From positions 62,001-126,000 of IMG/VR virus record IMGVR_UViG_3300027770_000025: 64,000 nucleotides of DNA. The stretch is one strand, 5' to 3'. The notes under the pieces were generated by a model, which was not told the origin of the DNA, did not search any database, and saw only the letters and a program-made list of their open reading frames with translations. The position numbers and the translations under genes are program-made. Positions 11,886 through 34,979 of the stretch are shown here, piece by piece (position 1 is the stretch's first letter; every line of letters begins with the position of its first letter).

Positions 11886-12279
11886 CTCAGGTGATTTTGC
11901 TAGGCGGTTTGGCTACCCACCAGATACCTCATATGCGAGGCCCCCTCAAAAGGACCCCTGTGAGGGACCCCTAAATGGTACTCTTTGGTCCCTCCCCTAA
12001 TGTATGGGTCCCCTAGCTTGGCGATCCCAGCCCCTATAACTACCCCTATACGTGAGGGGGCTTTACCCTATATACAGGACCCCCTTTTTTAACCCCCCTC
12101 CACACCCTGGAGGGGCCCTCGTTTCTAGGAAGCCACTAAGTTTAAAAAAATATAGCTAAGTAGGAGTGGGAACGTTGACCACGGTTTCACCATAGCTTGC
12201 TAGCTTTTTCCAAAAGGTTTAGCCCACAAAAAAAGCCTAGTGTCCTAGGCTTCTGTGGGGTGTCAGTAAATTGTGTTTG

Positions 12280-12417
12280 CTAAAACTCGAAACTTGCGGT
12301 CCCGACGTAGTTGCCTACGATAACATTAAAAATTGAAATTAGGATTCCGCCGAATGCGATTATCCCTAGACCGATAGCCCAAACTTTAAAAGTGATTTCT
12401 ACTGCTGATGATTTCAT
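12280..12417 (-). CDS. 45-aa single-TM early peptide
   Basis: Manual translation MKSSAVEITFKVWAIGLGIIAFGGILISIFNVIVGNYVGTASFEF; own promoter and terminator. Confidence 0.65.
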   Translation of the reverse strand: MKSSAVEITFKVWAIGLGIIAFGGILISIFNVIVGNYVGTASFEF

Positions 12418-12492
12418 ATGAATTAGTTTTAATTGGTTATAAAGTAAATGTAAGACATCTAGTCCAGGATAAAAAATATTACTGGTTCTTTT

Positions 12493-12669
12493 TTAGAAAA
12501 TAAATTTTATCAACTCCCAGCACCCTATGATCACAGCTAAAGGAACGATGCCTATCTCTAGACCTCTGGCCTTTGAGTAGTTAAAATGAAGAGGGTTTGC
12601 TATCAGTGCCTTTAATACACTGTATAGTAGGAAGAACGGAAATACGATAATCTGAAGTAGTTCTCTCAT
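12493..12669 (-). CDS. 58-aa membrane peptide
   Basis: Manual translation MRELLQIIVFPFFLLY...; own early promoter. Confidence 0.6.
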   Translation of the reverse strand: MRELLQIIVFPFFLLYSVLKALIANPLHFNYSKARGLEIGIVPLAVIIGCWELIKFIF

Positions 12670-12777
12670 GTGTATATGTTTTAATTGGTTAGCACAAATA
12701 TAAAGGGTTATATCGGGATAAAAAAATAAAGCTCTTGGTATTCTGTGGCCGGCGGTTCCTGATGCTGCTCACGTTGT

Positions 12778-12951
12778 CTACTCGTTGCTATCTAGCTGCT
12801 CAATTAGCATTTCTGCAAGGTGACCTATCCATCTGCCTATCTGCCAACATCCAATAATTACAAGAAGTGAATCTGGCAATATGATGATTAAGGATAGCGT
12901 TACACATATCGCAATTATCATGATGGGAATAGTGTGTTTAATAAGCTTCAT
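12778..12951 (-). CDS. Small membrane protein (start revised)
   Basis: MKLIKHTIPIMIIAICVTL... Confidence 0.55.
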   Translation of the reverse strand: MKLIKHTIPIMIIAICVTLSLIIILPDSLLVIIGCWQIGRWIGHLAEMLIEQLDSNE

Positions 12952-13270
12952 AGTTAATGGATTTAAGTTGTTATTTATATAAGGGTTGTTGTCAATTGTT
13001 TCTGTCCGCGGAAAATGCTGCGAAGTTGCTGCGAAGTTGCTGCGAAGTTGCTGTAAAGAGTGGGAACGTTGACAACGGTCTACCCAGCTGCATGCTATTG
13101 CTTTTCCCATCTTTTTCCGGAATTTTTAGTGGGGGTTTTACAGCTGTGCTCTATGGTCGTACCGAGGGCAACGTTCCCGCAGCAGCTTAGAGTTTTTGCT
13201 TGGCGAATTCTTTGACCAATAAAAAAGGCCTCGTGTGAGGCCCCTTCGGTGATTTCGTGAAATGTGTGGG

Positions 13271-13444
13271 TTAGTACCCGTTTCCATCTTCCCACTCTTC
13301 ATCTTGAAGCGGGTGGTGGAACGCTGGTCCTTGTGGGAAGCCATTACCAGAAGCCTGGTGTGCGATTGCGGGTTGGGGTTTGTTGCCCATTTGGTTTGCC
13401 CAAAAAGATTTTGGAGTTACTGGGGAAAATTGGTGGTTTTTCAT
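13271..13444 (-). CDS. Small early protein (start revised)
   Basis: MKNHQFSP...; early promoter upstream, terminator downstream. Confidence 0.6.
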   Translation of the reverse strand: MKNHQFSPVTPKSFWANQMGNKPQPAIAHQASGNGFPQGPAFHHPLQDEEWEDGNGY

Positions 13445-13503
13445 ATGACGATTTATTAGTTGGTTACATAGCAAATATAAGAATTCCAGTTCAGGATAAA
13501 AAA

Positions 13504-13722
13504 TTAAAACCTATTTTTTTCATTTAGTCCGCTAACCTTTTTGCCCTCTGGCAGGATCGTCGATAGCATAAACATTGCTGCCAACATAAAGCTTAAGAAA
13601 CAAAATGCCATCTCGTTGAGAACGCCGGCAAAGTGAATGTAGGTTTGGATATCCCCTGTTGCAGTGAACACCCCGATTAGCATGCAAGCTAAGAATCCTA
13701 AAACGTTTAATAGATTTTTCAT
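13504..13722 (-). CDS. Small two-TM early protein
   Basis: Two hydrophobic segments; promoter upstream. Confidence 0.65.
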   Translation of the reverse strand: MKNLLNVLGFLACMLIGVFTATGDIQTYIHFAGVLNEMAFCFLSFMLAAMFMLSTILPEGKKVSGLNEKNRF

Positions 13723-13797
13723 GTGTATATGGTTTAGTTGGTTATAGCATAAAAGTAAACAATCCCGCCGCGGGAAAAAAATAAACCTGAGATTTTT

Positions 13798-13959
13798 TTA
13801 AATCTCAGGTTCAAGTAAATCCCAGGCAGTTTCTCCGGTCGGGATATTGTTTTTAAGAATTGTGTAATTCGGGTCCATGCCGGAATCCATGACGTCATTA
13901 AGCAACTCATCAAGGGTTGAAAATGATTTTGTGTAGTAATCGCAGTCTAATGTGTACAT
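13798..13959 (-). CDS. 53-aa acidic early protein
   Basis: Manual translation MYTLDCDYYTKSFSTLDELL...; promoter at ~13983. Confidence 0.65.
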   Translation of the reverse strand: MYTLDCDYYTKSFSTLDELLNDVMDSGMDPNYTILKNNIPTGETAWDLLEPEI

Positions 13960-14575
13960 AAGAAAGTGTTTAATTGGTTATCTAAATATAAGACATCTGA
14001 TTGGGATAAAAAAATAAATTTTAATAAAATTATAAATAAACTTTTCTGGAGTAATACAGGTTAAGAATCTAAAACCTGTTAACAGTCGCTGTACCGCTGT
14101 CAACGTTCCTTAGACTTTTTCCAGATGCTTCCAGATGCTTCCAGATTGTTCCAGGATAATAATCCGGATACATGCGCTGGAACGTTGACAGCGGTTTAAA
14201 TACGGAAAAGAATCTGAAAACAGTAGGTGGTTTCCCAGAGAATTCCTGGATTTTTCCAAGCATCTATGGATTTATGGAGTGGGAACGTTGACGACGGATA
14301 TAGACATGGTACAAATTCAAAAAACCCCTGAGGATTTTCCCTGTTTTTCCGCGGATACACAGGCTATAGATTGTGGTCGACGTTCCCGCTCATTTCTATC
14401 AGGATCTTTCGTGGTTTAATATAGGATGTTCATGTGGTTTAACGTATGGGTTTCTGATGTATCCATGAAATATCCAGATGTTTTCAGATGTATCCAGGGT
14501 GTATTCAGATGTTTTCAGTCGCGGGAACGTTGACGACGGTTTAAGCAACAGACAGCAACAGACAGCAACAGTAGT

Positions 14576-14719
14576 TTATTGCTTGTTCTTTCTAATGATG
14601 GGGGTGATTATTCGGTCTAGTATTTCGAAAGATACTATCACCATTCCTAATATAGCTGCTGCTATCATGCTTATAAAGCCCACTGCTAACACCAAAGGTA
14701 ATCTTATTAGTCTTTTCAT
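14576..14719 (-). CDS. 47-aa single-TM peptide
   Basis: Manual translation MKRLIRLPLVLAVGFISMIAAAILGMVIVSF... Confidence 0.45.
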   Translation of the reverse strand: MKRLIRLPLVLAVGFISMIAAAILGMVIVSFEILDRIITPIIRKNKQ

Positions 14720-14885
14720 ATCTTCTTTTTCTTTTTCTTATACGAAGCTTACATGGCTTCTTCTTATCTACCATCTCCGTGGCCGGCTTTCCTGAGTTGA
14801 GATTCGGAAAATATTTAGCAGGTTCTATAACTTCTTTCTCACATGAAATAAAAAAGAGTGGTATAAGTAACAGTAATTTATTCAT
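14592..14885 (-). CDS. Possible small lipoprotein
   Basis: MNKLLLLIPLFFISC signal/lipobox-like; overlaps the previous ORF. Confidence 0.4.
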   Translation of the reverse strand: MNKLLLLIPLFFISCEKEVIEPAKYFPNLNSGKPATEMVDKKKPCKLRIRKRKRRYEKTNKITFGVSSGLYKHDSSSYIRNGDSIFRNTRPNNHPHH

Positions 14886-15100
14886 ATATGTATTTATCAG
14901 ATTTATTAAAACTCCTAAAACCCTCCGCGTGCGGGAGTATGTTAGCACCATACTATGTGCAGGAAGTTATGCATTTTTCCACGCATCTTCGGGACGGGAA
15001 CGTTGACAACGGTCTTCGGATTCGTACTAGATAAAAACTCGGGACAACAAAAAAGCAGACCGAAGTCTGCTTTTTATTAAATTACTTTAAAATAATGTTA

Positions 15101-15427
15101 CTAAGAATATTCATCACACTCCCTTAAAAATTCAATATCCATTTCATCAATATCACCTATTGATATTTCATCATATTCTCTGTTTATAAATTTCTTTCCC
15201 TCTATTAAACACTCTGTTATAATCTCCACATTTAAAATAGCTCCTATTAAACTCTCAAACCCCATTCCTGAATCTAGACTTCCGTCTGATAAAGCCTTCT
15301 CTGCCAACTCTCTAATATCGGGCATAGAGTCGCCAGTAATCTTAATGGTTGGGTAAGCTCCTCTTCCGCCTCCCCATAAATTTCCTAGTAAAAATCCTTC
15401 GGCGTGATAACTAATTTTCTTTTCCAT
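15101..15427 (-). CDS. Early hypothetical protein
   Basis: ORF with own promoter and GCAGAC/GTCTGC terminator. Confidence 0.75.
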   Translation of the reverse strand: MEKKISYHAEGFLLGNLWGGGRGAYPTIKITGDSMPDIRELAEKALSDGSLDSGMGFESLIGAILNVEIITECLIEGKKFINREYDEISIGDIDEMDIEFLRECDEYS

Positions 15428-15760
15428 GTTTGTTTAGCTTTAGTTGGTTATGATGCAAATATAAGAAACTAGATAGAGATAAAAAAATAAAATGTGAAAA
15501 TAATTTAATTCTTAATGACCACACAAACAGATGTTGGAGATCGGGGAACGTTGACAACGGTTTTACCCCAACTCTATCTGGAAACTCCCTTCTTCTTTTT
15601 TCTCCAGATAATCCTCTTTTTCCCAGAGTGTTTTCCACCCGGTCTAGGAGCGGGAACGTTGACAACGGTTTTACCCTGAGATGTGGATTACTTTAGTAAA
15701 AATTTGTCCACAAAAAAAGCAGACCGAAGTCTGCTTTCTTATTGACTATGAATCAACAGC

Positions 15761-16264
15761 CTATCCTTGTTTAAAGAATAGGTCGTCGACTTTGATTTGT
15801 GTGCTAGCTAAAACATGTTGAAGACAATCAGGACCGAAGCCGGTGTTAATTGATTCTGGGTGTGTTAGCGGTAATGCACACCGGAAGCATTTTCCTTCGT
15901 GCAATAATGATACCTTCTTATCCCTTAGGATCTGTGGATTCTCTAGCGCATTCATAATGAATTTCATAACCTGACCAAGTTGACTTTCGCTTGGAACGTT
16001 GCGGTGTAGTTTGCAAATCATACTGTCTTTGAAAATTGTACCTGCAAAAACGTAACCAGTTTGGCGATCGCCTAATAGGCTAACGAACACGTAGAAAATT
16101 GGAAGCTTAATCTTACGGTCGTTCTTGTCCGTGAGTTGCTTAACCTTTACGGTCATGTGAGTTTCTTTTTCTGTGTTGCGGAACGTGAGTACTGCACGAC
16201 CTGCAAAGAAAAGAGTTGGTAATGCGAGCGGGTTAACATTTGAACGGATAATTGGCTTTCTCAT
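15761..16264 (-). CDS. DUF6011-like Zn-finger protein
   Basis: CFRCALPLTHPESINTGFGPDC. Confidence 0.75.
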   Translation of the reverse strand: MRKPIIRSNVNPLALPTLFFAGRAVLTFRNTEKETHMTVKVKQLTDKNDRKIKLPIFYVFVSLLGDRQTGYVFAGTIFKDSMICKLHRNVPSESQLGQVMKFIMNALENPQILRDKKVSLLHEGKCFRCALPLTHPESINTGFGPDCLQHVLASTQIKVDDLFFKQG

Positions 16265-16693
16265 GGTGTATGTGTTTTAATTGGTTAATGCAAATATAAG
16301 ACCTTAACCCGGGATAAAAAAATAAAGCCCAGACTAATCCGGGTTTATTTTTAATCGAATATTTACACCTCAAGTATAAAAAATTGCTTTTTTTTAAACT
16401 TTATAAATCTGCTGGGAATCGTTCAGACCACGGGAACGCTGGTGGTGTTCCCATGCCCCCTTCTTCTTTTTCGGTTTGTATTTGTTGGCATCCTCATTGT
16501 TCAGAAACCACCTTATCCTCTTTCCATCTCACTGTACCGTGCTTATCCTCTATCACCTCATGCTCGTGGTGGGATTCCGTTTTAAAGATTTGTTTATAAT
16601 CTTTAATTTCATAAAGAGATTTTCTGTCTATTATTTTCATTTGATTTCTTTTAAATCCCTCGCGAGCGTGAGTATGTTAGTGACATACTATGT

Positions 16694-16963
16694 TTAGAAT
16701 AAACCTAGTTGGCGTATGCTTCTCTCGCCGAACTCCCTGTTTATCTGTTCTATTGTTTGATGACTCCTTGGATCTTCATCTTCAGAATACCAAACTTCAA
16801 ATGTGGTTTCGCCATTTCCGTATAGACTGCGCCCAGCACCACCACCTACAACGGAAGCGCTGGTTCCGTTTGGTAATTCCAGAAATGCAGATTTACCTCC
16901 TGGAACTACCTGGTGTGGTTTAAACACCAGGTCTTCAAAGGTGAAGATTTTTAGTTCTTGCAT
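16694..16963 (-). CDS. Early hypothetical protein
   Basis: SVVGGG..LYGNGETTFEV. Confidence 0.7.
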   Translation of the reverse strand: MQELKIFTFEDLVFKPHQVVPGGKSAFLELPNGTSASVVGGGAGRSLYGNGETTFEVWYSEDEDPRSHQTIEQINREFGERSIRQLGLF

Positions 16964-17121
16964 AGTATCAATCTTACGTTTTCGTTCTCGATAACATCAA
17001 AGGCTTTTCTTTCCTCTGTGATTTGGGTGTTAATCTTTTTAAGAGCTTCAATCATATTTCGGAATGCTGCTTGCATTTCCAAAAATTCTTTTCTGTTTTC
17101 ATCATTTGATTTCTCTGACAT
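16951..17121 (-). CDS. 56-aa early coiled-coil-like peptide
   Basis: Manual translation MSEKSNDENRKEFLEMQ...; promoter at ~17148. Confidence 0.55.
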   Translation of the reverse strand: MSEKSNDENRKEFLEMQAAFRNMIEALKKINTQITEERKAFDVIENENVRLILCKN

Positions 17122-17197
17122 GGCGTTTGTTTTAATTGGTTACAAAGCAAATATAAGAAACATGATTGAGATAAAAAAATAAAAGAGAGGATATTTT

Positions 17198-17386
17198 CTA
17201 AGCTCTTTCTATATCTAAATCCCCATATCTGTCACGGACTGGTATCCATCCGTAAATCATTCCAACCTCATCTACCCAATCATAAAGACCCATTCTGTCA
17301 TCCTCATGGGCTTTGTTGTTCCACTCGGCTAAGTCCTTTCTGACTAAGCTCCACCACTCATCTTTTGTTGCTGCTGTTACTGTCAT
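17198..17386 (-). CDS. Early hypothetical protein
   Basis: ORF track; follows 17390..17611. Confidence 0.6.
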   Translation of the reverse strand: MTVTAATKDEWWSLVRKDLAEWNNKAHEDDRMGLYDWVDEVGMIYGWIPVRDRYGDLDIERA

Positions 17387-17389
17387 AAT

Positions 17390-17611
17390 TTAGTCCTCCT
17401 CTTCGTTTAGTGGGGCAAACATTTTCCTGCCCATGTTAATAAAGTTATCGTACTCTCTTTCTCCCATTGAAGTCTTTAACTCTTCAACAGCTTCTTTGTG
17501 CTCTTTGATTTTTAATCTGGCTTTGTCCCAGTCGCCAGATGCTGCTGATTCTTTAATTTCCCAGTTGGTATCTAATACCTTTCTGAAGATTGCTGATTGT
17601 TCGTCGGTCAT
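17390..17611 (-). CDS. Early hypothetical protein, paralogue of 34538..34750
   Basis: Shared MTxxQ..F and L..SMG..EY......GR pattern. Confidence 0.7.
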   Translation of the reverse strand: MTDEQSAIFRKVLDTNWEIKESAASGDWDKARLKIKEHKEAVEELKTSMGEREYDNFINMGRKMFAPLNEEED

Positions 17612-17673
17612 GATGTGGTTTATTATTTGGTTAATACAAAGATAAGAAATTGGATCGGGATAAAAAAATAAAA

Positions 17674-17973
17674 CTATAAATCATTTAGAATTTCAAATGA
17701 ACTAATTCGTCTCGAACCAACACCAGTTGCTAGTATTGATTGAATCTCCTTGTCCAAGTCCTCCACCTTTTTAAAATTCCGCGCACCGATAGGGAGGGAA
17801 CGTTGGAGTTGCATGTTGGATATACTGAATCCCGTTCCGCTGGATTGCCAACCACCGTAGTAGTTGTAAGAGAGTGTGTTGTCCTCACGAAGAACAACTG
17901 ATAAAGTTTTTGAGTTTCCCTGTGGTCCGTAAGTCGGATCAAATAGACGGTAAATAATAAGTAGTTTTTTCAT
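17674..17973 (-). CDS. Early hypothetical protein
   Basis: Own promoter. Confidence 0.7.
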   Translation of the reverse strand: MKKLLIIYRLFDPTYGPQGNSKTLSVVLREDNTLSYNYYGGWQSSGTGFSISNMQLQRSLPIGARNFKKVEDLDKEIQSILATGVGSRRISSFEILNDL

Positions 17974-18055
17974 GGTTGGTTATATTTAATTGGTTAATGC
18001 AAATATAAGATTCCCTGTTGGGATAAAAAAATAAAACTGAATAATTTAACTTACC

Positions 18056-18244
18056 CTACCCTCGTCGTTTGATTATTAGTTTTACCTCAGCAACTAATTC
18101 TTTTGATTCTGTCTTAACCGTTAACGGATTCGCTCCGGGACGATGTGTCTTAAAGAATTTAACAATTGCGGGTACGTTTAGCATACCGCCATTAATTAAT
18201 TCTATAATTTCTGCTCTAATTTCTGTGGTTGTCATTGCGTTCAT
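18056..18244 (-). CDS. Early hypothetical protein (start revised)
   Basis: Own promoter at ~18263. Confidence 0.6.
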   Translation of the reverse strand: MNAMTTTEIRAEIIELINGGMLNVPAIVKFFKTHRPGANPLTVKTESKELVAEVKLIIKRRG

Positions 18245-18349
18245 ATTTGTCTTATTAATACTCAAATATAAGATAATAAATCGGAGTAAAAAAATAAATA
18301 CAGATTATTACTGCATGGTGTTTTCTGATGTAGCAGATAGTTCGAAACG

Positions 18350-18777
18350 TTGTCAACGTTCCTGCGCCGCAACCTTGTTTGTCTTATGGGAATTGATATA
18401 TAGATTAATAAAAAATAAAAAAACTAATGAAAAATTTTAATTCTTTCGAAGATTTCAGTAACCAAAAAATAAACGAGGCAGCGGGCGTAGCTCCTTTTTA
18501 TGATAGCGTAAGCCAAATGAATGCTATATTAGCAAGTGATGATATTGCGGGTAAAATGGAAATGATGTTCATTGACAGTATGACCTATGCAGAGGATCTC
18601 ACATGGATTCTTAAAAGTAAAGATCGTCCCAGATTTATTTTAAAGGTAACTTTAATAGCTGAGGGCGGAGGATATGGTGCTAAAAAATATACTGTAGGTA
18701 AAGTAGTAAAAACTATTGCAACACCTTAATTGTATTGTCAACGTTCCTGCGCCGCAACCTTGTTTGTCTTATGGGAA
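18350..18777. mobile_element. Gene cassette bounded by a perfect 43-bp direct repeat
   Basis: ttgtcaacgttcctgcgccgcaaccttgtttgtcttatgggaa at 18350-18392 and 18735-18777. Confidence 0.6.
18427..18729 (+). CDS. CTS-like-tagged late protein inserted in the early region
   Basis: MKNFNSFEDF..INE; GATATATA at 18395; opposite strand to neighbours. Confidence 0.75.
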   Translation: MKNFNSFEDFSNQKINEAAGVAPFYDSVSQMNAILASDDIAGKMEMMFIDSMTYAEDLTWILKSKDRPRFILKVTLIAEGGGYGAKKYTVGKVVKTIATP

Positions 18778-18856
18778 ACCTTGGAGCACAAAAAAAGAGA
18801 CCGAAGTCCCTTTCTCTGTGGGTAACCAAACCCATATCAAACACACATGATAATTT

Positions 18857-19054
18857 TTAATCCTCTATTTCGAATTGGTCTTCTTCGGGAATAACGGAAA
18901 GGGTTCTTCCACTATCCCATTTAACAATGATCTGACCTATTCCGTCTACTTTAACTACTGTACCCATAGCTCCCGGTTCGATTGGTTCAATATCATCCAT
19001 AAGAATCATTTTAATTCTTTTTCCTTCGATGTTTTTGCTGGTCAGGTGTTTCAT
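18857..19054 (-). CDS. DUF4314-like protein
   Basis: MDD..PIEPGAMGTVVKVDGIGQIIVKWDSGRTLSVIPEED. Confidence 0.75.
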   Translation of the reverse strand: MKHLTSKNIEGKRIKMILMDDIEPIEPGAMGTVVKVDGIGQIIVKWDSGRTLSVIPEEDQFEIED

Positions 19055-19121
19055 TGTCTTTTTCTTTTATTGGTTAATACAAAGATAACGTTTATATTCG
19101 GGATAAAAAAATAAAATCCGA

Positions 19122-19517
19122 TTATTCCCAATCATCATCTTCCTCTTCCTCTTCTGCGTAGAAGAAACCCTGAGCTTCGCAGGACTCCGGGTTCGGTAAG
19201 CTATTATACTGAGCTACCACATCGTCCTCTAACTCATGAACAAACTTCGGATAGATTACTCCGGGAGTGTTGTCCCCGCCTGGATTGTTCCTGAATACTA
19301 AATCAATTCCTGCACCTCGGTCTTCAGGTAAACCATTTAGCTCGCATAGGAGATCATAAAAATCCTTTCCACCAAACTCTCCGTAACCTTCATAATCAGG
19401 TTCGGTAAATACCCGTCCGTCCGGTGCAATCATATGCACTGTGAATGTTGGACGAGTTGAACAGTTGTTTGCGATTGACTCATCAGTATCGCACGTTTTC
19501 CAGCTAAAGAATCCCAT
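19122..19517 (-). CDS. Early conserved phage protein
   Basis: MGFFSW...YEGYGEFGGKDFY. Confidence 0.75.
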   Translation of the reverse strand: MGFFSWKTCDTDESIANNCSTRPTFTVHMIAPDGRVFTEPDYEGYGEFGGKDFYDLLCELNGLPEDRGAGIDLVFRNNPGGDNTPGVIYPKFVHELEDDVVAQYNSLPNPESCEAQGFFYAEEEEEDDDWE

Positions 19518-19752
19518 AGTGTTTTAGTTTTAATTGGTTATGGAGTAAAAGTAAGGTATCAGGTCGGGATAAAAAAATAAAAACTGAAAAAATACTCCGC
19601 CGGAGAAAGTAATAAAAACAGATGCTTCTGCTGGAGAAAACAGTATGCAGCCGCGGGAACGTTGACAGCGTTCTTCGGATTCGCAGCTGTGGAAAACCTA
19701 CGGCAACAAAAAAGGCAGACCTAAGCCTGCCTTTCAAAAGATTTTAAATCTT

Positions 19753-20061
19753 TTATTCGTCTAATTCGTTTAGTGCTCCTGCAATTTCATTTACAGCCAG
19801 ATCTGTAGAAAGTGATGAATGTCCGCCAATGTGCCATTCTATTAGTTCATTCTCATCCAATACCCTGTATTCCTTCCAATCATAAACTGTAAATACCTCA
19901 CCCTTCTCAGTCTCCATGACCCATTCGAAGTTTACCTTGTCCTTGCCATCATTCGTTTCAGAAACTGGAAGACCTAATATTTTTCGAAGGTCTGATACTG
20001 ATGCATTGAATACATCCCCATGGAAGCTTGTCCCACTTGGTGACTTTGATGGTTTTTTCAT
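19753..20061 (-). CDS. Early conserved phage protein (start revised)
   Basis: DKVNFEW...FTVYDWKEY...WHIGG. Confidence 0.75.
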   Translation of the reverse strand: MKKPSKSPSGTSFHGDVFNASVSDLRKILGLPVSETNDGKDKVNFEWVMETEKGEVFTVYDWKEYRVLDENELIEWHIGGHSSLSTDLAVNEIAGALNELDE

Positions 20062-20315
20062 AATTGTATAAGTTAGTTGGTTATGATGCAAATATAAGAT
20101 TCCTGGTTGGGATAAAAAAATAAAATGCTAAAATAGTTTTATTTTTCTTTAAGATGTTGAAGCTGTAGATAAAGATGTTACCCACATATAAAAAGATGTA
20201 GAAGTCGCGGGAACGTTGACAGCGTTCTTTGGATTCGCAGCTGTCGAAAACCTATGGCAACAAAAAAGGCCAAACCTAAGTTTGACCTCTTTAACCAATC
20301 AACCAACTTAACCAA

Positions 20316-20615
20316 TTAATATTTTGGCGGTGTAAAGAACACTATAGTTACTCCGCCTTCTCTAAATCCATCAGATACCATTACGCCATCCAACTTACCT
20401 TTATCTTCTCTGTTAATGTTATACCATTTGGAAATATAGCCAACTACGTCTGAATCTGCAAATCCTATTGGCTCTGGTCCACACATAGAACCCACTGTAT
20501 ATCCTAATTCTTTCAGTCTTCTCTCAGCGGAATTGAATGCGCTAAACGTGCCCGCGGGCGGAAAGGTTTCGGTGTGAAGTATTTCTCTTCCTAAATACGT
20601 TTCTCCTTTTTTCAT
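20316..20615 (-). CDS. Early hypothetical protein (start revised)
   Basis: GYTVGSMC..PIG...KW...LDG...FREG. Confidence 0.7.
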   Translation of the reverse strand: MKKGETYLGREILHTETFPPAGTFSAFNSAERRLKELGYTVGSMCGPEPIGFADSDVVGYISKWYNINREDKGKLDGVMVSDGFREGGVTIVFFTPPKY

Positions 20616-20831
20616 GATTGTTTGTTTTAGTTGGTTATAAAGCAAATATAAGATATAGGTTCGGGGTAAAAAAATAAAATACTAAATACCCTTCGCGGGC
20701 GTGAGTATCTTAGCACCATACTATGTGCAGGAGGTTACGGATTTTTCCACGCATCTTCGGGGCGGGAACGTTGACAGCGTTCTTCGGATGCTGCTTGGAT
20801 TAAAAATTAGATGTGGTGAGAAAAATAAATA

Positions 20832-21458
20832 TTATAAATTATTAATGATATCAATAAATATCTTTTTGGTCTCTTCTTTACCTATCTTTTCTTCTATGGA
20901 TTTGATAAAATTTATTACAATAGTCTGTTTGTAAATTTCCTGTTCGTAATCCTCCCATCTCTTAGCCTTTCCATCAGGTTTAGTATCCATAAACACCGTA
21001 GGTGCTTTTCCTGTGCATTTAGTTACAAGAGTCTCAACTTCTTTAATAATCCTGTCTACTTCAGTTTTATTTGTAATCACTATCTTTATATTAGGTAACT
21101 CTGATTGAAATTTATCATAGTCAAAATTTTTAGGAACTCTTACAGATACATGAGTAACACCGCCGCCTCTTCCGGTAAAATCTTTAGAGCCAATTCTAAT
21201 TCTAAGAACATTTTCTGAATCAATAGAAGATAAGTTCTTATTATCCTTTTCTCTATCGTATCTAAAATTATAAAAATCACTAGGATTAGTTATTATAAGT
21301 TTATCAAACGAACTTTCATTATCAGATGATATACTTGGATCGTCTTCTTTTACTTTAACATACCCATCAATAGTTGAATTAACATTAAATTTTAATTCAC
21401 TATATGGTAATTGGTCTTCGTTAATTTTTTCGTAGATAAAATCTTTAAATGTTTTCAT
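20832..21458 (-). CDS. CTS-like-tagged late protein inserted in the early region
   Basis: MKTFKDFIYE (very close to T4 IPIII MKTYQEFIAE); GATATATA upstream; flanked by 49-bp direct repeats. Confidence 0.75.
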   Translation of the reverse strand: MKTFKDFIYEKINEDQLPYSELKFNVNSTIDGYVKVKEDDPSISSDNESSFDKLIITNPSDFYNFRYDREKDNKNLSSIDSENVLRIRIGSKDFTGRGGGVTHVSVRVPKNFDYDKFQSELPNIKIVITNKTEVDRIIKEVETLVTKCTGKAPTVFMDTKPDGKAKRWEDYEQEIYKQTIVINFIKSIEEKIGKEETKKIFIDIINNL

Positions 21459-21603
21459 TTCTATTGTTATTTATATATTTATATATCTTTAGTTTGAGCG
21501 GGAACGTTGACAGCGTTCTTCGAATGCTACTTGGATTAAAACTTAGTCCAACAAAAAAGCCTCTTCCGAAGAAGAGGCTCTTGACCAATTAACCAACTAC
21601 CAA

Positions 21604-21891
21604 TTATAACATTGCTCTCACTTTTGCGAAGTACTTATCAATGTCATTTGCGAACTTAATTGCTCTTGCCTTTGTTTTAGCGTAAGCAAAGAACTCGCAG
21701 AACTCACTATCGAAGTCTATTCCTTTGCAGTTAATTTTTTCTTTGACAAAATCTTCAAAGTCATATGCGCTATCAAACTCTTTAACAGTCATCGCTCTTT
21801 TAGCGTTTCCTGAGATTGACCAATCTTTGAAGCCATCGAGTTTATAGACTTCAAGACCTAATTCTAATTTTAATGCTGTTTCTGATGGCAT
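21604..21891 (-). CDS. Early hypothetical protein
   Basis: AACCAAC leader and terminator. Confidence 0.7.
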   Translation of the reverse strand: MPSETALKLELGLEVYKLDGFKDWSISGNAKRAMTVKEFDSAYDFEDFVKEKINCKGIDFDSEFCEFFAYAKTKARAIKFANDIDKYFAKVRAML

Positions 21892-22094
21892 GTGTGATTG
21901 GGTTTAGTTGGTTGTTAAAACATTTTAATTTTTAATTTTTGTCGAACAGATTCAAAATCTGCACCAGTGACTTCATTCTTACAATCAGAGACTAAATCAC
22001 ATAGTTCATTAAAATCTTTAACTCCTGATTGTTTTGCTAACTTTAGTAACTCTTTGAATCCTTCTGTCATAATTATTTGGGTTGGGTTTAGTTA

Positions 22095-22307: not shown

Positions 22308-22369
22308 ATTAATTTGTTTATTTGGTTATATTACAAAGATAAGAAACTACATCGTGATAAAAAAATAAA

Positions 22370-23334: not shown

Positions 23335-23395
23335 ATGGTTTGTTTTAATTGGTTAATACAAAGATAAGGTATTTATTCGGGATAAAAAAATGTTT

Positions 23396-25626: not shown

Positions 25627-26634
25627 TTATAACCCGTCCTCCTCTTCCTCTTTAGCAAAACCAAAGAGAGTGTCAAATGCGTTTCCTTCGCTTTCGATTA
25701 GAGTACGCTCGTGGCTTAAAGCCTCTCTGGCATTCTCATCGTTGCTGAAACGTTTTAAATCATACTCAACATCACCCGTTGCAGATAGAGAATAGAACAT
25801 TCGTTTGTTAACAGGACCACGTCTGTTCTTGTTAAACATCATATACTGGCTGCCTGTTGCTTGATCGTAGCGTAACTCAAGCATACCAGTGGTATTATGC
25901 TTAAGCTTATTAGAACCGACGAAAACGCCTCCTTTTGTAACCTGTTGGATAGCAATAAAGGTTGTGTGGGTTTTAGTATCGTTTCCTGCAAGGTTGTGAG
26001 AGATCATTAGGTCGATCAGCCATTTTTCAGAACCGGTAGAGGTTAGTTTTAGTACCTCCTTAATATCTTCTTGTACCTCGGCAAAAGAGTCAATTAGTAC
26101 TACGTCGTAACCAGGTTTTAAAGCACTCTCAATTACAGTCTTAGGATTGCTGTCGCAATATTCTCCTGTAAATAGAATATCAACCTCGCCGAACTTGGGG
26201 TAACGCTGAACGTATCCATAAAGATCGATCCTTGTCATTTCAGCAGATATGAATAACACCCGATAGCCGTTGGCTGCCAGGTCGGAAAGAATATCTAACG
26301 ACACTGTGGATTTACCCACACCAGGATCGCCGATTAACATGAAGTTACAGGCCTTAGGTATTCCTCCATCGGAGGTGAACACCTGATCTACAGGTTTACC
26401 TGTCTTCATAGGAATGAATAGATCTGGTGAGAAGTATTGCCCACTCATGCGAACCAACTCCAGCGGCTTCTCGATAAATGCCGGTGGTGGTACATTGGCA
26501 CTTACTTGGGAAAGCGGAGGTAGTCCTTGATCTTGTCTTTTTCTAGCAGCAGCTAATCTGACTGCATCTGCGATACGAGCCTTAGCCTCATCGCTCATAG
26601 GTTTTCTTAGTCCTGTTGGTTCTTTGTGTGCCAT
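25627..26634 (-). CDS. RecA-superfamily ATPase, RadA/Sms-like (start revised)
   Basis: GDPGVGKST Walker A, FISAEM, VLIDS Walker B, QVTKGG.FVGSNKLKH, KNRRG. Confidence 0.75.
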   Translation of the reverse strand: MAHKEPTGLRKPMSDEAKARIADAVRLAAARKRQDQGLPPLSQVSANVPPPAFIEKPLELVRMSGQYFSPDLFIPMKTGKPVDQVFTSDGGIPKACNFMLIGDPGVGKSTVSLDILSDLAANGYRVLFISAEMTRIDLYGYVQRYPKFGEVDILFTGEYCDSNPKTVIESALKPGYDVVLIDSFAEVQEDIKEVLKLTSTGSEKWLIDLMISHNLAGNDTKTHTTFIAIQQVTKGGVFVGSNKLKHNTTGMLELRYDQATGSQYMMFNKNRRGPVNKRMFYSLSATGDVEYDLKRFSNDENAREALSHERTLIESEGNAFDTLFGFAKEEEEDGL

Positions 26635-27899: not shown

Positions 27900-28046
27900 T
27901 TTTCCACGCAACCACAGAGCAGGAACGTTGACAACGGTTTCACCCACTACATCATACTTTTTCCCAATTATTAAACACAACAAAAAACCCAAGTCCTTTC
28001 GAACTTGGGTCCGGAGTCGAATAGTAAACTCCTTTAACCAACCAAC

Positions 28047-29743: not shown

Positions 29744-29943
29744 GATAAAAGGTTTTAATTAAATTTACATGTATTATAGCAGGAAAACGTGAAAAAGTTT
29801 CTGATGCTGTCTTTCGGATGATGCCATCAGACGGAACGGTGTCAACGTTCCCGCGGTCTGTCTATGATTTTGGATTTAGTCAAATCCCACAAAAAACCCC
29901 CGGACTTTTGGACCGAGGGCTAATTGCTTTGTAACCAAACAAA

Positions 29944-32521: not shown

Positions 32522-32526
32522 GATTA

Positions 32527-32748
32527 CTATTCTTTTATATAAATTGTTTTACTTAATCCCAACTCTTTTACTTCACGATATAAAGTACCCCCTTCTGACA
32601 TCATTTCCATTTCAGAACGAAATTCTTTCGATGTGTCGTTATAAATTTTCTCCCTCATTAACGCACCTCTAGCTGAATAAAGCCTTCTTTTAATCTCCTC
32701 GTGGGAAGCTTTATTATCAGTGGTACATACAAATCTTATCGCTGCCAT
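32527..32748 (-). CDS. Hypothetical protein
   Basis: Operon context. Confidence 0.55.
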   Translation of the reverse strand: MAAIRFVCTTDNKASHEEIKRRLYSARGALMREKIYNDTSKEFRSEMEMMSEGGTLYREVKELGLSKTIYIKE

Positions 32749-32798
32749 ATTTAATTCTCTATATGTATTCTATTACAAAAAATAAAAAAAGTTCTCAA

Positions 32799-33185
32799 TT
32801 ATACCTTATATCTTGTTTTCAAATCCACTCTTTCTTTCTGCGAATTTTTTCTTGTGCTCTTCGCGGGAACGACGGTGGACTGGGACACGTAACTCTTTCT
32901 GGTGTTTCTCGCCTCCTCAAACGTGTCGGCAAACACTCCCATTGTGGTGTTCTCATAGTCACAGTGAGGTGTGTAGGTTTCCATAAACTCGCTCTCCGTG
33001 ATTCTCTTGGTTCCAAGATCCTCGAATTCCCCATGTGATTCTCGATAGTGAGTGACTATTACCCAACCGTCTCCTTGAGAGTGTTTGCTAACTAAAACAT
33101 ATTCGAAGGTGGGAACGTTGGAGTCCATGGCCATGAATCTGGTAGCAAATCTACTTTTTGTGCTGGTCTCTATATACGTTCTCAT
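32799..33185 (-). CDS. Hypothetical protein
   Basis: ORF track. Confidence 0.55.
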   Translation of the reverse strand: MRTYIETSTKSRFATRFMAMDSNVPTFEYVLVSKHSQGDGWVIVTHYRESHGEFEDLGTKRITESEFMETYTPHCDYENTTMGVFADTFEEARNTRKSYVSQSTVVPAKSTRKNSQKERVDLKTRYKV

Positions 33186-33360
33186 TATGCTAACTGTGAG
33201 CTTGTTCTTAATTGGTTTAACCAGCCTTTAAATACTGTGCGCTCACGTGCACTCATATTACGATTAAAGGTTGCGAAGTTGCCTACTGAGTTTCTGAACT
33301 CCTGTACTAGAACTTCTAATGTGCGTGGGGTGTTTTCTGCTTTTTTCATCTTATGTTGGT

Positions 33361-33960
33361 TTAAATGTTTACAATGTTGCCTTCTTCATTAAACTCCGGA
33401 GTAGTCTCTTCAATTCTGAATTCGACGTTTTCGTCAGAGAAGTATTCTTCTACCCCATTTACTATTCTTTTTGCTATTTGTCCTATGTGAGCTTCGAACT
33501 TTTCCGCAGCGTTATTACTAATAGCCTTTAGTGCTTCGTGGCGAGGGTCCTCGCTCATATATGGATTTTCCATTTCGATGATTGTTCTGCCGTCCCAGTC
33601 CATCATACTTACGTATAGATCTTGGAATATTTCCGGGATTCCCAACCAGGTCTTAAACATAGTTTGATTTGTGATCTCTAGCGCATCTGTGATCTGAACT
33701 GTTTCGAAGTAGTCCTCAAACAATATACCCTTTCTGTTATTCTTGAAAACGAATTGATCTCCATTGCGGTCGTAATAATCTTCTCCAAAAAGAGCCACCA
33801 TTTCTGCGTGGGGTGGCTCGAAGAGTGAGCAATCATCAATAGCCCAATCATATGCACTATGTGTTTCATGTTCTTTCATTTCTTCCCTTATCTCTTCTAT
33901 AGCTGTGGCCTTGGCAGATTCGGAAAGTTCTGAATAGTTTAATAACGTTATAGTTCTCAT
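33361..33960 (-). CDS. Acidic early protein; apparent paralogue of 57892..58572 (start revised)
   Basis: YSELSESAKATAIE...SDE.V...EFNEEGN. Confidence 0.7.
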   Translation of the reverse strand: MRTITLLNYSELSESAKATAIEEIREEMKEHETHSAYDWAIDDCSLFEPPHAEMVALFGEDYYDRNGDQFVFKNNRKGILFEDYFETVQITDALEITNQTMFKTWLGIPEIFQDLYVSMMDWDGRTIIEMENPYMSEDPRHEALKAISNNAAEKFEAHIGQIAKRIVNGVEEYFSDENVEFRIEETTPEFNEEGNIVNI

Positions 33961-34029
33961 AGTTGGCTGTTTGTTATAAAGCAAATATAAGATTCCTAAA
34001 TCGGATAAAAAAATAAAATGTAAACTTTT

Positions 34030-34536
34030 TTAAATAATTAAGTCTGTCCCGGTTTCCTCTATCTTTTCTATCCGTGTTGCAATATCTTCTATTCTAGCAT
34101 CATATCCTTTGATAGCATCTTTCTTCTCCTTAACCAAATCATTCATCTCTTGATATCTAGCCTGAATTTTTTCTGCAATCTTAGGATGAAGCCATTTAGT
34201 AGATGCTGTACTATCTCTTATCTCGTTCTGATTTTTCACTGTAAGCTCGACCAACGTGTTTACATTATATGAATAGTAGTATGGCTTTAATCCACGATTA
34301 TACAGATCCAACGTTTCTGCAACACTTAGATCTTTCTTGGATAACAATTTCTCGATGGCCGTTTGTTCGATGACTGTTTGCTCGGTCTCCCAGTTTAGAT
34401 CTGCTAAATCCGTTACTCGTCGGGTAACTATCAAATCGCCTTCCTTGTTCTCACTCATTGAAAATCTCGGATAATCCATATAACTGTAATAAGGGGCTAA
34501 ACCACGAAACAACCCATCTAAATCTTTTTCATCCAT
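34030..34536 (-). CDS. Hypothetical coiled-coil protein
   Basis: ORF track. Confidence 0.65.
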   Translation of the reverse strand: MDEKDLDGLFRGLAPYYSYMDYPRFSMSENKEGDLIVTRRVTDLADLNWETEQTVIEQTAIEKLLSKKDLSVAETLDLYNRGLKPYYYSYNVNTLVELTVKNQNEIRDSTASTKWLHPKIAEKIQARYQEMNDLVKEKKDAIKGYDARIEDIATRIEKIEETGTDLII

Positions 34537-34537
34537 G

Positions 34538-34750
34538 CTATACTTTTTTCTTTATTTTAATACCGTATGCTTCTCTACCTTTAGCTAAAAGTCGTTCGTA
34601 CTCAGCCACCCCCATGGAACGTCGGAGCTTAATTTTCTTTTTTCTTAACTCCTTAACTAGGTTCCATTTTTTAATACCATCCTCCTCTAAGTTAAATTCT
34701 AGATGCAAAATAAGAATCTCGCTAAAAAGACATCTTTGGTTTTCTGTCAT
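34538..34750 (-). CDS. Early protein, paralogue of 17390..17611
   Basis: MTENQ..F...LRRSMGVAEY..GR. Confidence 0.65.
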   Translation of the reverse strand: MTENQRCLFSEILILHLEFNLEEDGIKKWNLVKELRKKKIKLRRSMGVAEYERLLAKGREAYGIKIKKKV

Positions 34751-34979
34751 TTTTTTATTTTTTGTTAAACGCGGTATCCCTTTCTATTATGAATACTATT
34801 ACAAAATTAAGATAAAACCGCGGGTATAAAAAATGTTTCGGATATAAAAAATATTTTTTGTTAAAGTTTTAAACTTTCTTTTATTCGCAAAAAGAAAAAA
34901 GAAAACACGCTTTACAAAAAAACCGCGGGAACGTTGACCGCGGTTTTCGGATTATTGCAATCCTAAGCCTTTAAAGTTC

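What the first reader, a model, noticed from the sequence alone, without database searches (positions are those of the whole stretch)
12168..34947. Candidate new system: early-region gene-cassette array punctuated by a GGGAACGTTGAC element
About 22 intergenic copies of GGGAACGTTGACnnCG(G/T), all that I found lying in 12.1-35 kb. They typically sit between one unit's terminator and the next unit's promoter. Neighbouring copies share long flanks (19652/20206, 20762/21498, 18350/18735), and 14922-15021 versus 20690-20789 share ~100 bp that also includes the AGTATG palindrome. This looks like an array whose 'spacers' are whole promoter-gene-terminator units, with the repeat duplicated on insertion. 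The core GGAACGTTG also occurs inside coding sequence at 15993, 17797, 22507 and 33112 in the majority orientation, suggesting a DNA-level site. Closest known analogy: PeSL elements of T4-type phages, but here the element is separate from both promoter and terminator. No integrase is visible in the window.
Basis: partly seen in the sequence, partly recalled or inferred. Interest (0 to 1): 0.85.

Follow-up and report, generated by a model that had tools for sequence, protein, structure and literature searches.

The report
Boundary palindrome in phage cassette region
A 21-base imperfect palindrome marks the ends of small gene units in the variable accessory region of a 349-kb freshwater phage; it is under selection and gene units are gained, lost and swapped at it, most likely by ordinary recombination between repeated control sequences rather than by a new dedicated cassette system.

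Summary
There are 22 copies of GGGAACGTTGAC (up to 1 mismatch; 0.11 expected). All lie in window 12.1-35 kb, and they are 22 of only 24 in the whole 348,582-bp phage genome.

Genes there run on the minus strand. In gene sense the element reads rAACCGyTGTCAACGTTCCCGC, a decayed inverted repeat. It sits 25-50 nt after the preceding unit's terminator or stop codon, and usually 72-126 nt before a strongly conserved promoter (P1).

Sister phages of 290-430 kb carry a cleaner palindrome at the same place and only in the same region. It is CACCG-N7-CGGTG in four of them and GGAACCG..CGGTTCC in one.

Twenty near-identical contigs from other lakes show 34 structural differences. About a third have a junction at the element, and another third at P1.

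The genome has no integrase, resolvase or Y1 transposase. A RecA/RadA-like ATPase borders the region.

Best reading: the element is a sequence-specific protein-binding boundary site inside composite terminator-palindrome-promoter cassettes. Because it is repeated, it also acts as a crossover point. That makes it a variant of the PeSL principle of T4-type phages. The binding factor and exact role remain unknown, and a dedicated recombination site is not excluded.

The parts
12166..12186 (+). element copy 1 (strand = strand on which GGGAACGTTGAC reads; gene sense is the opposite strand)
   Evidence: Exact core. It lies 48 nt after a terminator T-run in gene sense. Contig L161 carries an extra gene-less 92-bp unit here, bounded by a 17-18-bp repeat that is the element itself.
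13060..13080 (+). element copy 2
   Evidence: Exact core, followed in gene sense by three 11-bp tandem repeats. It forms an inverted pair with copy 3.
13160..13180 (-). element copy 3, inverted
   Evidence: One mismatch (GCC). It lies 45 nt after a hairpin plus T-run.
14092..14112 (-). element copy 4, inverted
   Evidence: One mismatch. It faces copy 5 across 68 bp that hold CATCTGGAAG repeats.
14176..14196 (+). element copy 5
   Evidence: One mismatch at the first base.
14279..14299 (+). element copy 6
   Evidence: Exact core. A 44-nt tandem duplication that includes a degenerate copy is polymorphic here in L158, L162, L165 and L166.
14369..14389 (-). element copy 7, inverted
   Evidence: GTCGAC variant of the centre.
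14521..14541 (+). element copy 8
   Evidence: Exact core, lying between 10-bp tandem repeats and CATCTG boxes.
14994..15014 (+). element copy 9
   Evidence: 41 nt after the terminator of gene 15101-15427. It is the end of a 96-bp repeat across which L147 and L148 lack that gene unit.
15542..15562 (+). element copy 10
   Evidence: 57 nt before the P1 promoter of gene 15101-15427. It shares 25 identical bases with copy 11. L160, L161 and L164 have the 108 bp between the two copies deleted.
15650..15670 (+). element copy 11
   Evidence: 48 nt after the terminator of the DUF6011 gene.
18345..18365 (-). element copy 12
   Evidence: It lies upstream of the inverted gene 18427-18729 and is part of a 43-bp perfect direct repeat.
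18730..18750 (-). element copy 13
   Evidence: It begins 7 nt after the stop of the inverted gene. Six variant contigs lack the gene and keep a single copy of the element.
19653..19673 (+). element copy 14
   Evidence: 41 nt after a terminator. In run X6 a contig joins the left flank of inverted copy 21 to this copy exactly at the element.
20207..20227 (+). element copy 15
   Evidence: It lies inside a 91-nt, 89% repeat with copy 14. L148 and L159 lack the gene between the two copies.
20762..20782 (+). element copy 16
   Evidence: It follows gene 20832-21458, which has no terminator. A 49-nt repeat shared with copy 17 ends at the element.
21498..21518 (+). element copy 17
   Evidence: 41 nt after a terminator, with GATATATAA 12 nt downstream. 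L146, L147 and L159 lack the 208-aa unit between copies 17 and 16.
22930..22950 (+). element copy 18
   Evidence: In L145 and L146 a 108-aa gene unit is inserted right after it and is followed by a second copy. The two flanks share only about 17 bp, which is the element.
23960..23980 (+). element copy 19
   Evidence: 50 nt after a terminator and 60 nt before a P1 promoter.
27919..27939 (+). element copy 20
   Evidence: 49 nt after the terminator of gene 28047-28475, facing the 3' end of the convergent gene 27027-27899. No promoter follows it.
29834..29854 (-). element copy 21, inverted, perfect dyad GGAACG-N7-CGTTCC
   Evidence: It is inverted relative to both neighbouring genes in the reference and in the nine variant contigs that reach it (L169-L173, L175-L177); L174 ends before it.
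34925..34945 (+). element copy 22
   Evidence: The core forms the loop of a hairpin (CCGCG/CGCGG) flanked by an A-run and a T-run, directly after gene 34980-35285.
12100..24400 (-). hypervariable part of the accessory (hyperplastic) region
   Evidence: Most genes here have no homologue in five sister phages, or one at a different position. 34 structural differences were found among 20 near-identical contigs.
20643..20682 (-). example of the P1 promoter module (T-run, ATCCC, 7-9 nt, TAnnTTTG box)
   Evidence: Conserved before most units. 25 of 49 genome copies lie in genome 70-100 kb. It is the other main recombination junction.
15706..15724 (-). example of an intrinsic terminator that precedes the element
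   Evidence: Terminators of this type occur genome-wide, but only those of genome 74-92 kb are followed by the element.
20689..20725 (-). example of the AGTATG..CATACT palindrome module
   Evidence: This module is found only in genome 70-100 kb, and it is conserved in sequence in sister phages.
18427..18729 (+). inverted 100-aa cassette gene, present or absent in the population
20832..21458 (-). 208-aa cassette gene, present or absent in the population
25627..26634 (-). RecA/RadA-superfamily ATPase bordering the variable region in all relatives
   Evidence: PDB matches to RadA at 6e-7 and to RecA over residues 77-290. Pfam KaiC and RecA matches are weak. It is 72-78% identical in relatives.
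8285..9199 (+). sigma-70 family factor (regions 1.2, 2, 3, 4) on the other border

Best explanation
The repeat is the conserved centre and one arm of a roughly 21-bp imperfect inverted repeat. In gene sense it reads rAACCGyTGTCAACGTTCCCGC. It is this phage's version of a palindromic element, core CCG-TyG-n-CrA-CGG, that a clade of 290-430-kb freshwater phages places at the ends of transcription units. The element occurs only in the variable accessory region between a RecA-like ATPase block and a sigma-factor block.

I take it to be a double-stranded DNA site for a sequence-specific, probably dimeric, protein that has not been identified. My preferred role is a boundary or insulator: a bound protein behind each terminator or stop codon blocks read-through into the next unit, or times that unit, as the stoperators of mycobacteriophages do.

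Together with the terminator before it and the P1 promoter after it, the element forms a composite regulatory cassette. These modules are repeated some 20 times among otherwise unrelated genes. They are therefore the only homology available, and the phage's general recombination machinery crosses over in them. That deletes, duplicates, inserts and inverts gene units.

Shown: confinement to one region, selection on the sequence, conservation in relatives, and junction enrichment. Inferred: protein binding, the boundary role, and homologous rather than site-specific exchange.
For: - Non-random and confined to one region.
- The 12-nt core shows 1.5% differences among orthologous copies in lake populations, against 8-9% in the flanks.
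- Sister phages carry CACCG-N7-CGGTG (7, 14, 7 and 2 copies; reversed control 0), and one carries GGAACCG..CGGTTCC. In every case the copies lie only in the syntenic region and 25-58 nt after a terminator.
- The arms differ between phages at symmetric positions but are constant within a genome. That is the pattern of a protein site.
- In this phage the hairpin potential of the sense strand equals that of shuffled sequence (-2.5 against -2.9 kcal/mol), yet the sequence is kept.
- The element is tied to unit ends. It is a near-constant 41 or 48-50 nt from the T-run. It is present after a convergent gene with no promoter beyond it. It follows terminator-less genes. In my count, its orientation follows the upstream gene in about 18 of 22 copies.
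- Junctions: 11-12 of 34 structural differences have the element at a breakpoint and 13 have P1. Flanking repeats are 17-208 bp.
- A RecA/RadA-like gene is adjacent.
- No integrase, resolvase or Y1 transposase was found.
Against: - No candidate DNA-binding protein was found. HTH_3, HTH_17, HU and ParB_N are absent from the genome, and Pfam and Atlas gave nothing for conserved neighbouring genes.
- Five or so terminators inside the region lack the element.
- Several copies lie in gene-poor stretches, some as inverted pairs, which a pure boundary role does not explain.
- The distance to the promoter's -7 box shows a weak periodicity of about 10.5 bp (Rayleigh p 0.002, but the copies are not independent). 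That would fit an upstream activator site instead.
- In several events the two recombining flanks share only the 17-25 bp of the element, which is short for homologous exchange.
- There are no transcript 5' or 3' end data.
Confidence: 0.5

Rival explanations
1. The element is a dedicated site-specific recombination site, working like an integron attC site or a plasmid pdif site. An unrecognised phage enzyme or a host recombinase cuts and rejoins at the element, moving gene cassettes in and out of the array.
For: - Junctions are enriched at the element.
- In three events only the element, 17-25 bp, is shared by the recombining flanks.
- Homology blocks repeatedly stop 0-9 nt past the same edge of the core.
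- Cassette gene orientation is coupled to element orientation, including in the inverted 100-aa unit.
- A contig in run X6 joins an inverted and a direct copy exactly at the element.
- The dyad symmetry resembles recombinase core sites.
Against: - The complete genome has no Phage_integrase, Resolvase or Y1_Tnp match.
- P1 promoter modules are junctions as often as the element.
- Many flanking repeats are 43-208 bp long and extend well beyond the element.
- Units carry their own promoters and terminators.
- The element is also kept where nothing varies: copy 21 is identical in orientation in all nine variant contigs that reach it.
Confidence: 0.15
2. The element is an upstream regulatory site for the next unit's P1 promoter. 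An activator or repressor bound 85-135 bp upstream of the start site contacts RNA polymerase or loops the DNA, and recombination at the element is a by-product.
For: - Most copies lie 72-126 nt before the -7 box of a P1 promoter.
- The distances cluster near 73, 83, 93, 103, 113 and 123 nt.
- P1 and the element are enriched in the same 30 kb.
Against: - Copy 20 has no promoter after it.
- Three units use a different promoter-like motif (GATATATAR) at 12-70 nt.
- The distance to the terminator is tighter than the distance to the promoter.
- P1 promoters inside operons lack the element.
- The periodicity test used non-independent copies.
Confidence: 0.15
3. The element acts as an RNA hairpin in transcripts that read through the terminator, serving as a processing, stability or antitermination signal.
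For: - In sister phages the palindromes would fold at -9 to -10 kcal/mol.
- An RNA-library contig covers copy 16, which follows a gene without a terminator.
Against: - In this phage the sense-strand fold is no better than shuffled sequence.
- Within each genome the arms are constant in sequence, with uncompensated mismatches rather than compensatory pairs.
- Most copies lie beyond an intrinsic terminator.
Confidence: 0.07
4. The element is a promoter read on the plus strand, with its TTGACA serving as a -35 box for the phage's own sigma-70-like factor. It would produce short antisense transcripts.
For: - A perfect TTGACA in 12 copies, and a full sigma-70-type gene beside the region.
- Four copies score 10 of 12 in the consensus scan.
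Against: - There is no conserved -10 at 16-18 nt. Conservation instead runs contiguously on both sides of TTGAC.
- Sigma-70-like sites are not enriched in the region (34 found, 40.6 expected).
- In relatives the element is symmetric and lacks TTGACA.
Confidence: 0.04

Closest known systems
PeSL (promoter-early stem-loop) regulatory cassettes of T4-type phages (PMC2839356, PMC4122927)
   Same: Both are repeated composite intergenic control sequences (terminator stem-loop plus strong conserved promoter). Both are concentrated in hyperplastic regions full of small orphan genes. In both, indels and replacements between close relatives have their junctions in these repeats, no integrase is involved, and general recombination is invoked.
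   Different: The phage clade is different, and the promoter type has a TAnnTTTG box instead of the sigma-70 consensus. The queried element is a third, separate component: a lineage-specific palindrome between terminator and promoter that has no counterpart in PeSLs. Mini-circles were not tested here.
Stoperators of cluster A mycobacteriophages such as L5 and Bxb1 (PMC9283540, PMC6550527)
   Same: Both are a short, sequence-specific site repeated some 20-30 times in short intergenic spaces and oriented with transcription. Stoperators are bound by one protein that stops elongation, and they are lineage-specific in sequence.
   Different: Stoperators are spread over the whole genome of temperate phages, have a known repressor and are asymmetric. 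Here the sites are confined to one 23-kb region, are palindromic in sister phages, have no known binder, and the phage shows no integrase.
Integron attC sites and gene cassettes
   Same: Both are an array of small, mostly unrelated genes, each followed by an imperfectly palindromic element. Cassettes are present or absent between close relatives, and the element sequence is lineage-specific, as in chromosomal integrons.
   Different: There is no IntI-type recombinase, no attI and no common promoter. The element is 21 bp rather than 57-141 bp with the R/L box structure. The units have their own promoters and terminators, and junctions are just as frequent in the promoters.
REP / BIME extragenic palindromes (PMC3733652)
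   Same: Both are short imperfect palindromes placed after genes in extragenic space.
   Different: REPs occur in hundreds of copies genome-wide, carry a GTAG or CGTC tag and go with a RAYT transposase. Here there are 22 copies in one region, no consistent tag and no Y1 transposase.

Membership tests
PeSL-type mobile regulatory cassette | Conserved strong promoter repeated in intergenic spaces of a hyperplastic region | tested here: met
   The P1 module (T-run, ATCCC, TAnnTTTG) stands before most units. 25 of 49 genome copies lie in genome 70-100 kb. It is not a sigma-70 consensus promoter.
PeSL-type mobile regulatory cassette | Adjacent stem-loop acting as terminator for upstream transcription | tested here: met
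   A hairpin plus T-run lies 25-50 nt before the element and 100-180 nt before P1. Function is inferred from sequence only.
PeSL-type mobile regulatory cassette | Indel and replacement junctions between close relatives fall in the repeated cassette | tested here: met
   24-25 of 34 structural differences have P1 or the element at a junction.
PeSL-type mobile regulatory cassette | Formation of excised mini-circles during infection | not testable with these tools
   This needs inverse PCR or long reads from infected cells.
PeSL-type mobile regulatory cassette | The queried motif itself is the promoter or the stem-loop | tested here: not met
   The element is separate from both. It has no -10 partner and, in this phage, no stable hairpin.
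Integron (attC cassette array) | IntI tyrosine recombinase with attI next to the array | tested here: not met
   PF00589 gives no match in the complete 348,582-bp genome, while the control genomes all match.
Integron (attC cassette array) | attC of 57-141 bp with R''-L''/L'-R' boxes that folds as a single strand | tested here: not met
   The conserved block is about 21 nt. Single-strand folding is no better than shuffled sequence.
Integron (attC cassette array) | Cassettes mostly promoterless, expressed from a common promoter | tested here: not met
   Units have their own P1 or GATATATAR motif and usually their own terminator.
Stoperator-type operator | Many copies of one short site in intergenic spaces, oriented with transcription | tested here: met
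   22 copies. By my count, about 18 are co-oriented with the gene upstream. They are confined to one region.
Stoperator-type operator | Cognate repressor that binds the site and blocks elongation | tested here: inconclusive
   No candidate was found by family searches. Binding cannot be tested here.
REP element | Genome-wide high copy number, GTAG/CGTC tag, associated RAYT (Y1 transposase) | tested here: not met
   22 of 24 copies lie in 23 kb. There is no consistent tag and no PF01797 match.
parS / ParB-type centromere or silencing sites | ParB-family protein encoded with clustered palindromic sites | tested here: not met
   PF02195 gives no match in the genome.

The most novel reading that the evidence does not exclude
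The palindrome is the recombination site of a cassette-exchange system in huge phages that works without any known integrase family. An unrecognised phage enzyme, or a host recombinase, would cut at the edge of the conserved core and so build the accessory-gene array unit by unit. This would be a phage counterpart of integrons or pdif modules. The evidence for it is that the two sides of some junctions share only the 17-25 bp of the element, that homology blocks tend to stop at one edge of the core, and that one junction joins an inverted and a direct copy exactly at the element.
Probability: 0.15. Interest if true: 0.85.

Novelty: new variant of a known kind. Interest (0 to 1): 0.55.

Why it matters
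Huge phages carry large blocks of small genes of unknown function that differ even between near-identical genomes. How these blocks are built and controlled is poorly known outside T4-type phages.

Here the boundaries of the units are marked by a selected, lineage-specific palindrome. Natural populations from many lakes show units being lost, gained, duplicated and probably inverted at it and at the promoter.

This extends the 'mobile regulatory cassette' principle to an unrelated, uncultured phage clade. It also points to an unidentified sequence-specific factor. In addition, it gives a practical handle, the element plus the P1 module, for delimiting accessory gene units in metagenomic phage genomes.

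Tried and rejected
- **Exact-pattern scan of IMG/VR.** It returned only single chance hits. Relatives had to be found through the ATPase protein instead.
- **DNA searches of GenBank phages.** No match. The nearest protein hit, LR756508.1 at 34%, lacks the architecture.
- **Sigma-70 promoter reading.** Rejected: there is no -10 partner and no enrichment.
- **ECF-type promoter reading (GGAAC ... CGT).** Rejected: nothing is conserved 16-17 nt downstream.
- **N4-type hairpin promoter.** Considered because the relatives' palindromes could form a 7-bp stem with a 3-nt loop. It is unsupported: the largest ORF is 1848 aa, so there is no giant virion polymerase, and the phage has three sigma factors.
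- **RNA hairpin.** Rejected for this phage on folding energies. Rfam finds only a tRNA in the window.
- **Integron, REP/RAYT and parS/ParB.** The defining genes are absent.
- **Search for the binding protein.** Pfam, PHROGs, Atlas and genome-wide family searches gave no lead. No complex prediction was run because there was no candidate.
- **TPR-gene insertion in L158.** It first counted as a junction at the element. On inspection it lies in the variable segment after the element.
- **Contig with the X6-type inverted junction.** A look-up through the 90-aa neighbour gene did not recover such a contig.
- **First look-up of the 112-aa ORF.** It failed because its TTG start lies in the promoter; the true start is 30 nt downstream.

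Full report
**Observation**

GGGAACGTTGAC with up to one mismatch occurs 22 times in the window: 15 exact, 16 on the plus strand and 6 on the minus strand. All copies lie between 12168 and 34938. Dinucleotide-preserving shuffles give 0.11.

The window is bases 62,001-126,000 of a 348,582-bp virus record rated complete. The whole genome has 24 hits, and 22 of them are the ones in the window.

**Context**

No GenBank phage matches at DNA level. The phage is common in freshwater: at least 18 lake or freshwater DNA runs and one metatranscriptome hold this stretch.

Genes in 12-35 kb run on the minus strand. The motif as reported is therefore the antisense reading.

Most units start with a strikingly conserved promoter-like block that I call P1: a T-run, ATCCC, 7-9 nt, then a TAnnTTTG box, followed by an A-rich leader without a Shine-Dalgarno sequence. 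Shine-Dalgarno-like 4-mers before start codons are no more frequent than at random (11.7% against 10.9%). TAnnTTTG is enriched 2.3-fold upstream of genes. From established knowledge of Bacteroidota promoters (the -7 box TAnnTTTG and weak use of Shine-Dalgarno sequences) I infer a Bacteroidota host. This was not tested further.

P1 is concentrated in genome 70-100 kb (25 of 49 copies). A second palindrome, AGTATG..CATACT, occurs only there. The phage encodes three sigma factors. One is a full sigma-70-type protein that borders the region at 8285-9199.

**Anatomy**

In gene sense the conserved block is rAACCGyTGTCAACGTTCCCGC, about 21-22 nt. It is a decayed inverted repeat. The arms are GAAC(C)G and CGTTC around a 7-nt centre, yTGTCAA. 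The right arm and centre are nearly invariant, and the left arm is degenerate.

The element lies 41 or 48-50 nt after the T-run of the preceding intrinsic terminator. All nine terminators of the T-run-GTGG type on the gene strand between genome 74.2 and 91.9 kb are followed by it. None of the same type elsewhere in the genome is.

It also follows three genes that have no terminator, at 7-45 nt from the stop codon. It follows one gene that converges on another, so that no promoter lies beyond it (copy at 27921). Copy 34927 forms the loop of a terminator hairpin.

In my count, its orientation follows the gene upstream in about 18 of 22 cases. This includes the two copies around the one inverted gene, 18427-18729.

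Downstream of it come unit-specific short tandem repeats, often with a 10-11-bp period and CATCTG or CAGCTG cores. Then comes P1, with the -7 box mostly 72-126 nt from the element's centre.

**Relatives**

The neighbouring ATPase retrieved eight loci from five further phage genomes of 154 kb (a fragment) to 430 kb, at 72-78% amino-acid identity. None has the exact motif. All have an equivalent element at the same place:
- G002 has GGAACCGyTGyCAACGGTTCC.
- G001, G003, G004 and G005 have CACCG-N7-CGGTG, with 7, 14 (plus one distant hit), 7 and 2 copies; the reversed control pattern gives zero.

In every genome the copies cluster only in the syntenic region and lie 25-58 nt after a terminator.

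In every genome this region lies between the ATPase block and the sigma block. Its gene content is largely unshared or reshuffled.

The inner core CCG-TyG-n-CrA-CGG is common to all. The outer arms differ between phages at symmetric positions but are constant within a genome, with a few uncompensated mismatches.

The more distant phage LR756508.1 lacks the architecture.

**Selection and structure**

Among orthologous copies in other lake populations, the 12-nt core differs at 1.5% of positions, against 8-9% in the flanks. The requirement of at most 2 core mismatches biases this slightly.

As sense-strand RNA the element folds no better than shuffled sequence (-2.5 against -2.9 ± 2.2 kcal/mol). 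The relatives' palindromes reach -9 to -10. So in this phage the sequence, not the hairpin, is what is kept. That points to recognition of double-stranded DNA by a protein, with one strong half-site.

**Population variation**

Exact-protein look-ups returned about 20 contigs from other metagenomes that are 90-99.9% identical over shared parts but differ in gene content. Chained alignments give 34 distinct structural differences:
- Twelve have the element within 10 nt of a junction. One of these, a TPR-gene insertion, on inspection lies in the variable segment behind the element.
- Thirteen have the P1 module.
- Nine have neither.

Junction endpoints near the element number 15 of 66, against 4.7% expected (p about 4e-7). 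Against non-coding sequence only, the figures are 15 of 53 against 10.8% (p 3e-4). P1 is enriched to a similar degree.

Examples:
- The inverted 100-aa gene is absent from six contigs, which keep one copy of a 43-bp repeat that ends at the element's centre.
- The 208-aa gene is absent from three contigs, with a 48-49-bp repeat that ends at the element.
- L145 and L146 have an extra 108-aa unit inserted directly behind copy 22932 and followed by a second copy. Only about 17 bp are shared between the two flanks.
- Three contigs lack the 108 bp between two tandem copies that share 25 bp.
- L161 has an extra gene-less 92-bp unit bounded by 17-18 bp of the element.

Laying contigs of four runs on 18.0-24.0 kb gave the same picture. 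Most joints run promoter to promoter. Some lie in the spacer between terminator and element. One contig of run X6 joins the flank of the inverted copy 29841 to copy 19655 exactly at the element, as an inversion would. I could not recover that arrangement in longer contigs.

**What it is not**

The complete genome has no tyrosine recombinase, no serine recombinase and no Y1 (RAYT/IS200) transposase; the control genomes were positive in each search. It has no ParB.

The element is not a sigma-70 or ECF-type promoter. Nothing is conserved at the -10 distance, and sigma-70-like sites are not enriched. Rfam finds nothing in the region.

**Mechanism**

I commit to the following. The element is a binding site for a sequence-specific, probably dimeric, protein and marks the end of a transcription unit. 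It most likely works as a roadblock or insulator behind the terminator, as stoperators do in mycobacteriophages (PMC9283540). This part is inferred from position, orientation, selection and symmetry. No binder was found.

The second part is better supported. Terminator, element and P1 form repeated modules between unrelated genes, and recombination in these modules reshuffles the units. Four observations favour homologous or short-homology exchange, as proposed for PeSLs of T4-type phages (PMC2839356, PMC4122927):
- P1 is used as a junction as often as the element.
- Flanking repeats range from 17 to 208 bp.
- No dedicated recombinase is present.
- A RecA/RadA-superfamily ATPase lies at the border of the region in all relatives.

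The cases where only 17-25 bp are shared, and the tendency of homology to stop at one edge of the core, keep a site-specific mechanism alive at roughly 15%.

**Novelty**

The principle of mobile regulatory cassettes in hyperplastic regions is known. What is new is its occurrence in an uncultured clade of huge freshwater phages with a different promoter type, and the presence of a separate, selected, lineage-specific palindrome as a third component and recombination junction. I rate it a new variant of a known kind. It is of moderate interest, and higher if the element proves to be a true recombination site.

**Limits**

- All functional statements rest on sequence.
- Gene calls are my own simple caller plus the JGI calls.
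- Junction positions from local alignments are accurate to a few bases.
- The variant contigs are not independent lineages.
- The RNA evidence is contig-level only and cannot place transcript ends.

Noticed in passing
window 14907-14960, 16645-16690, 20689-20725, 24330-24400, 35351-35373, 35585-35607, 36752-36774: A second conserved module: the palindrome AGTATG-N7-CATACT followed by a short CGC..GCG dyad and a G-run. It is found only in genome 70-100 kb, and its sequence is conserved in sister phages. At 16641-16693 it sits directly between two genes with no promoter, so it may act in RNA.
   Followed up: partly
whole genome; in the window e.g. 21480-21490, 18395-18405, 9575-9590, 10720-10735: GATATATA(A/G) occurs 63 times genome-wide. 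46 copies lie 3-39 nt before a start codon on the same strand, in two classes of 3-6 nt and 13-30 nt. It is probably a second promoter class, perhaps for one of the phage sigma factors, giving very short leaders. The three population-variable units bounded by the palindrome use it and lack terminators.
   Followed up: partly
window 10720-10945, 11700-12100 and 35290-37420: GC-rich (43-46%), apparently non-coding islands flank the variable region on both sides. They are full of short GGGG/CCCC-containing words. At 36334-36385 and 37306-37354 there are 20-26-nt inverted repeats about 950 nt apart, around gene 36879-37265.
   Followed up: no
window 11773-11863: An 11-bp unit, TTGTAGACATT, is repeated four to five times in tandem, next to two copies of a TGGTTATAATGGTAT-like word. 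The arrangement is iteron-like and lies at the distal edge of the array.
   Followed up: no
window 13040-13060, 14115-14175, 14540-14570, 20140-20205 and the equivalent places in L123, L127, G004: Each intergenic unit carries its own short tandem repeats (7-11 bp, 2-4 copies, often with a 10-11-bp period) beside the palindrome. Many have CATCTG, CAGCTG or CATCTT cores. Their meaning is unknown; phased bending or a second binding site are possibilities.
   Followed up: no
window 16494-16640: The 48-aa ORF here is a remnant. Variant contigs have a 112-aa gene at this place, and the reference lacks about 150 nt inside it.
   Followed up: partly
window 22495-22516: Inside gene 22370-22810 there is an element-like dyad, GGGAAC-N9-CAACGTTCC. 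It is one of the four coding-sequence copies of the 9-mer, all in the majority orientation. No junction was seen at any of the four.
   Followed up: partly
window 8285-9199; genome 327870-328076 and 320489-320668: The genome has three sigma-70 family genes: one full-length protein (regions 1.2-4) beside the variable region, and two shorter ones (open frames of 214 and 148 aa). The full-length one is only 42-49% identical in sister phages, while its neighbours are 75-85% identical.
   Followed up: no
window 4143-4775: A 210-aa protein, 82-85% identical in sister phages, matches only the N-terminal part of the DegT/DnrJ/EryC1 aminotransferase family.
   Followed up: no
window 29750-29800: The unit after inverted copy 21 has no P1 promoter. 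It has a TGCTATAAT extended -10-like box instead, and this is conserved in all variant contigs.
   Followed up: no
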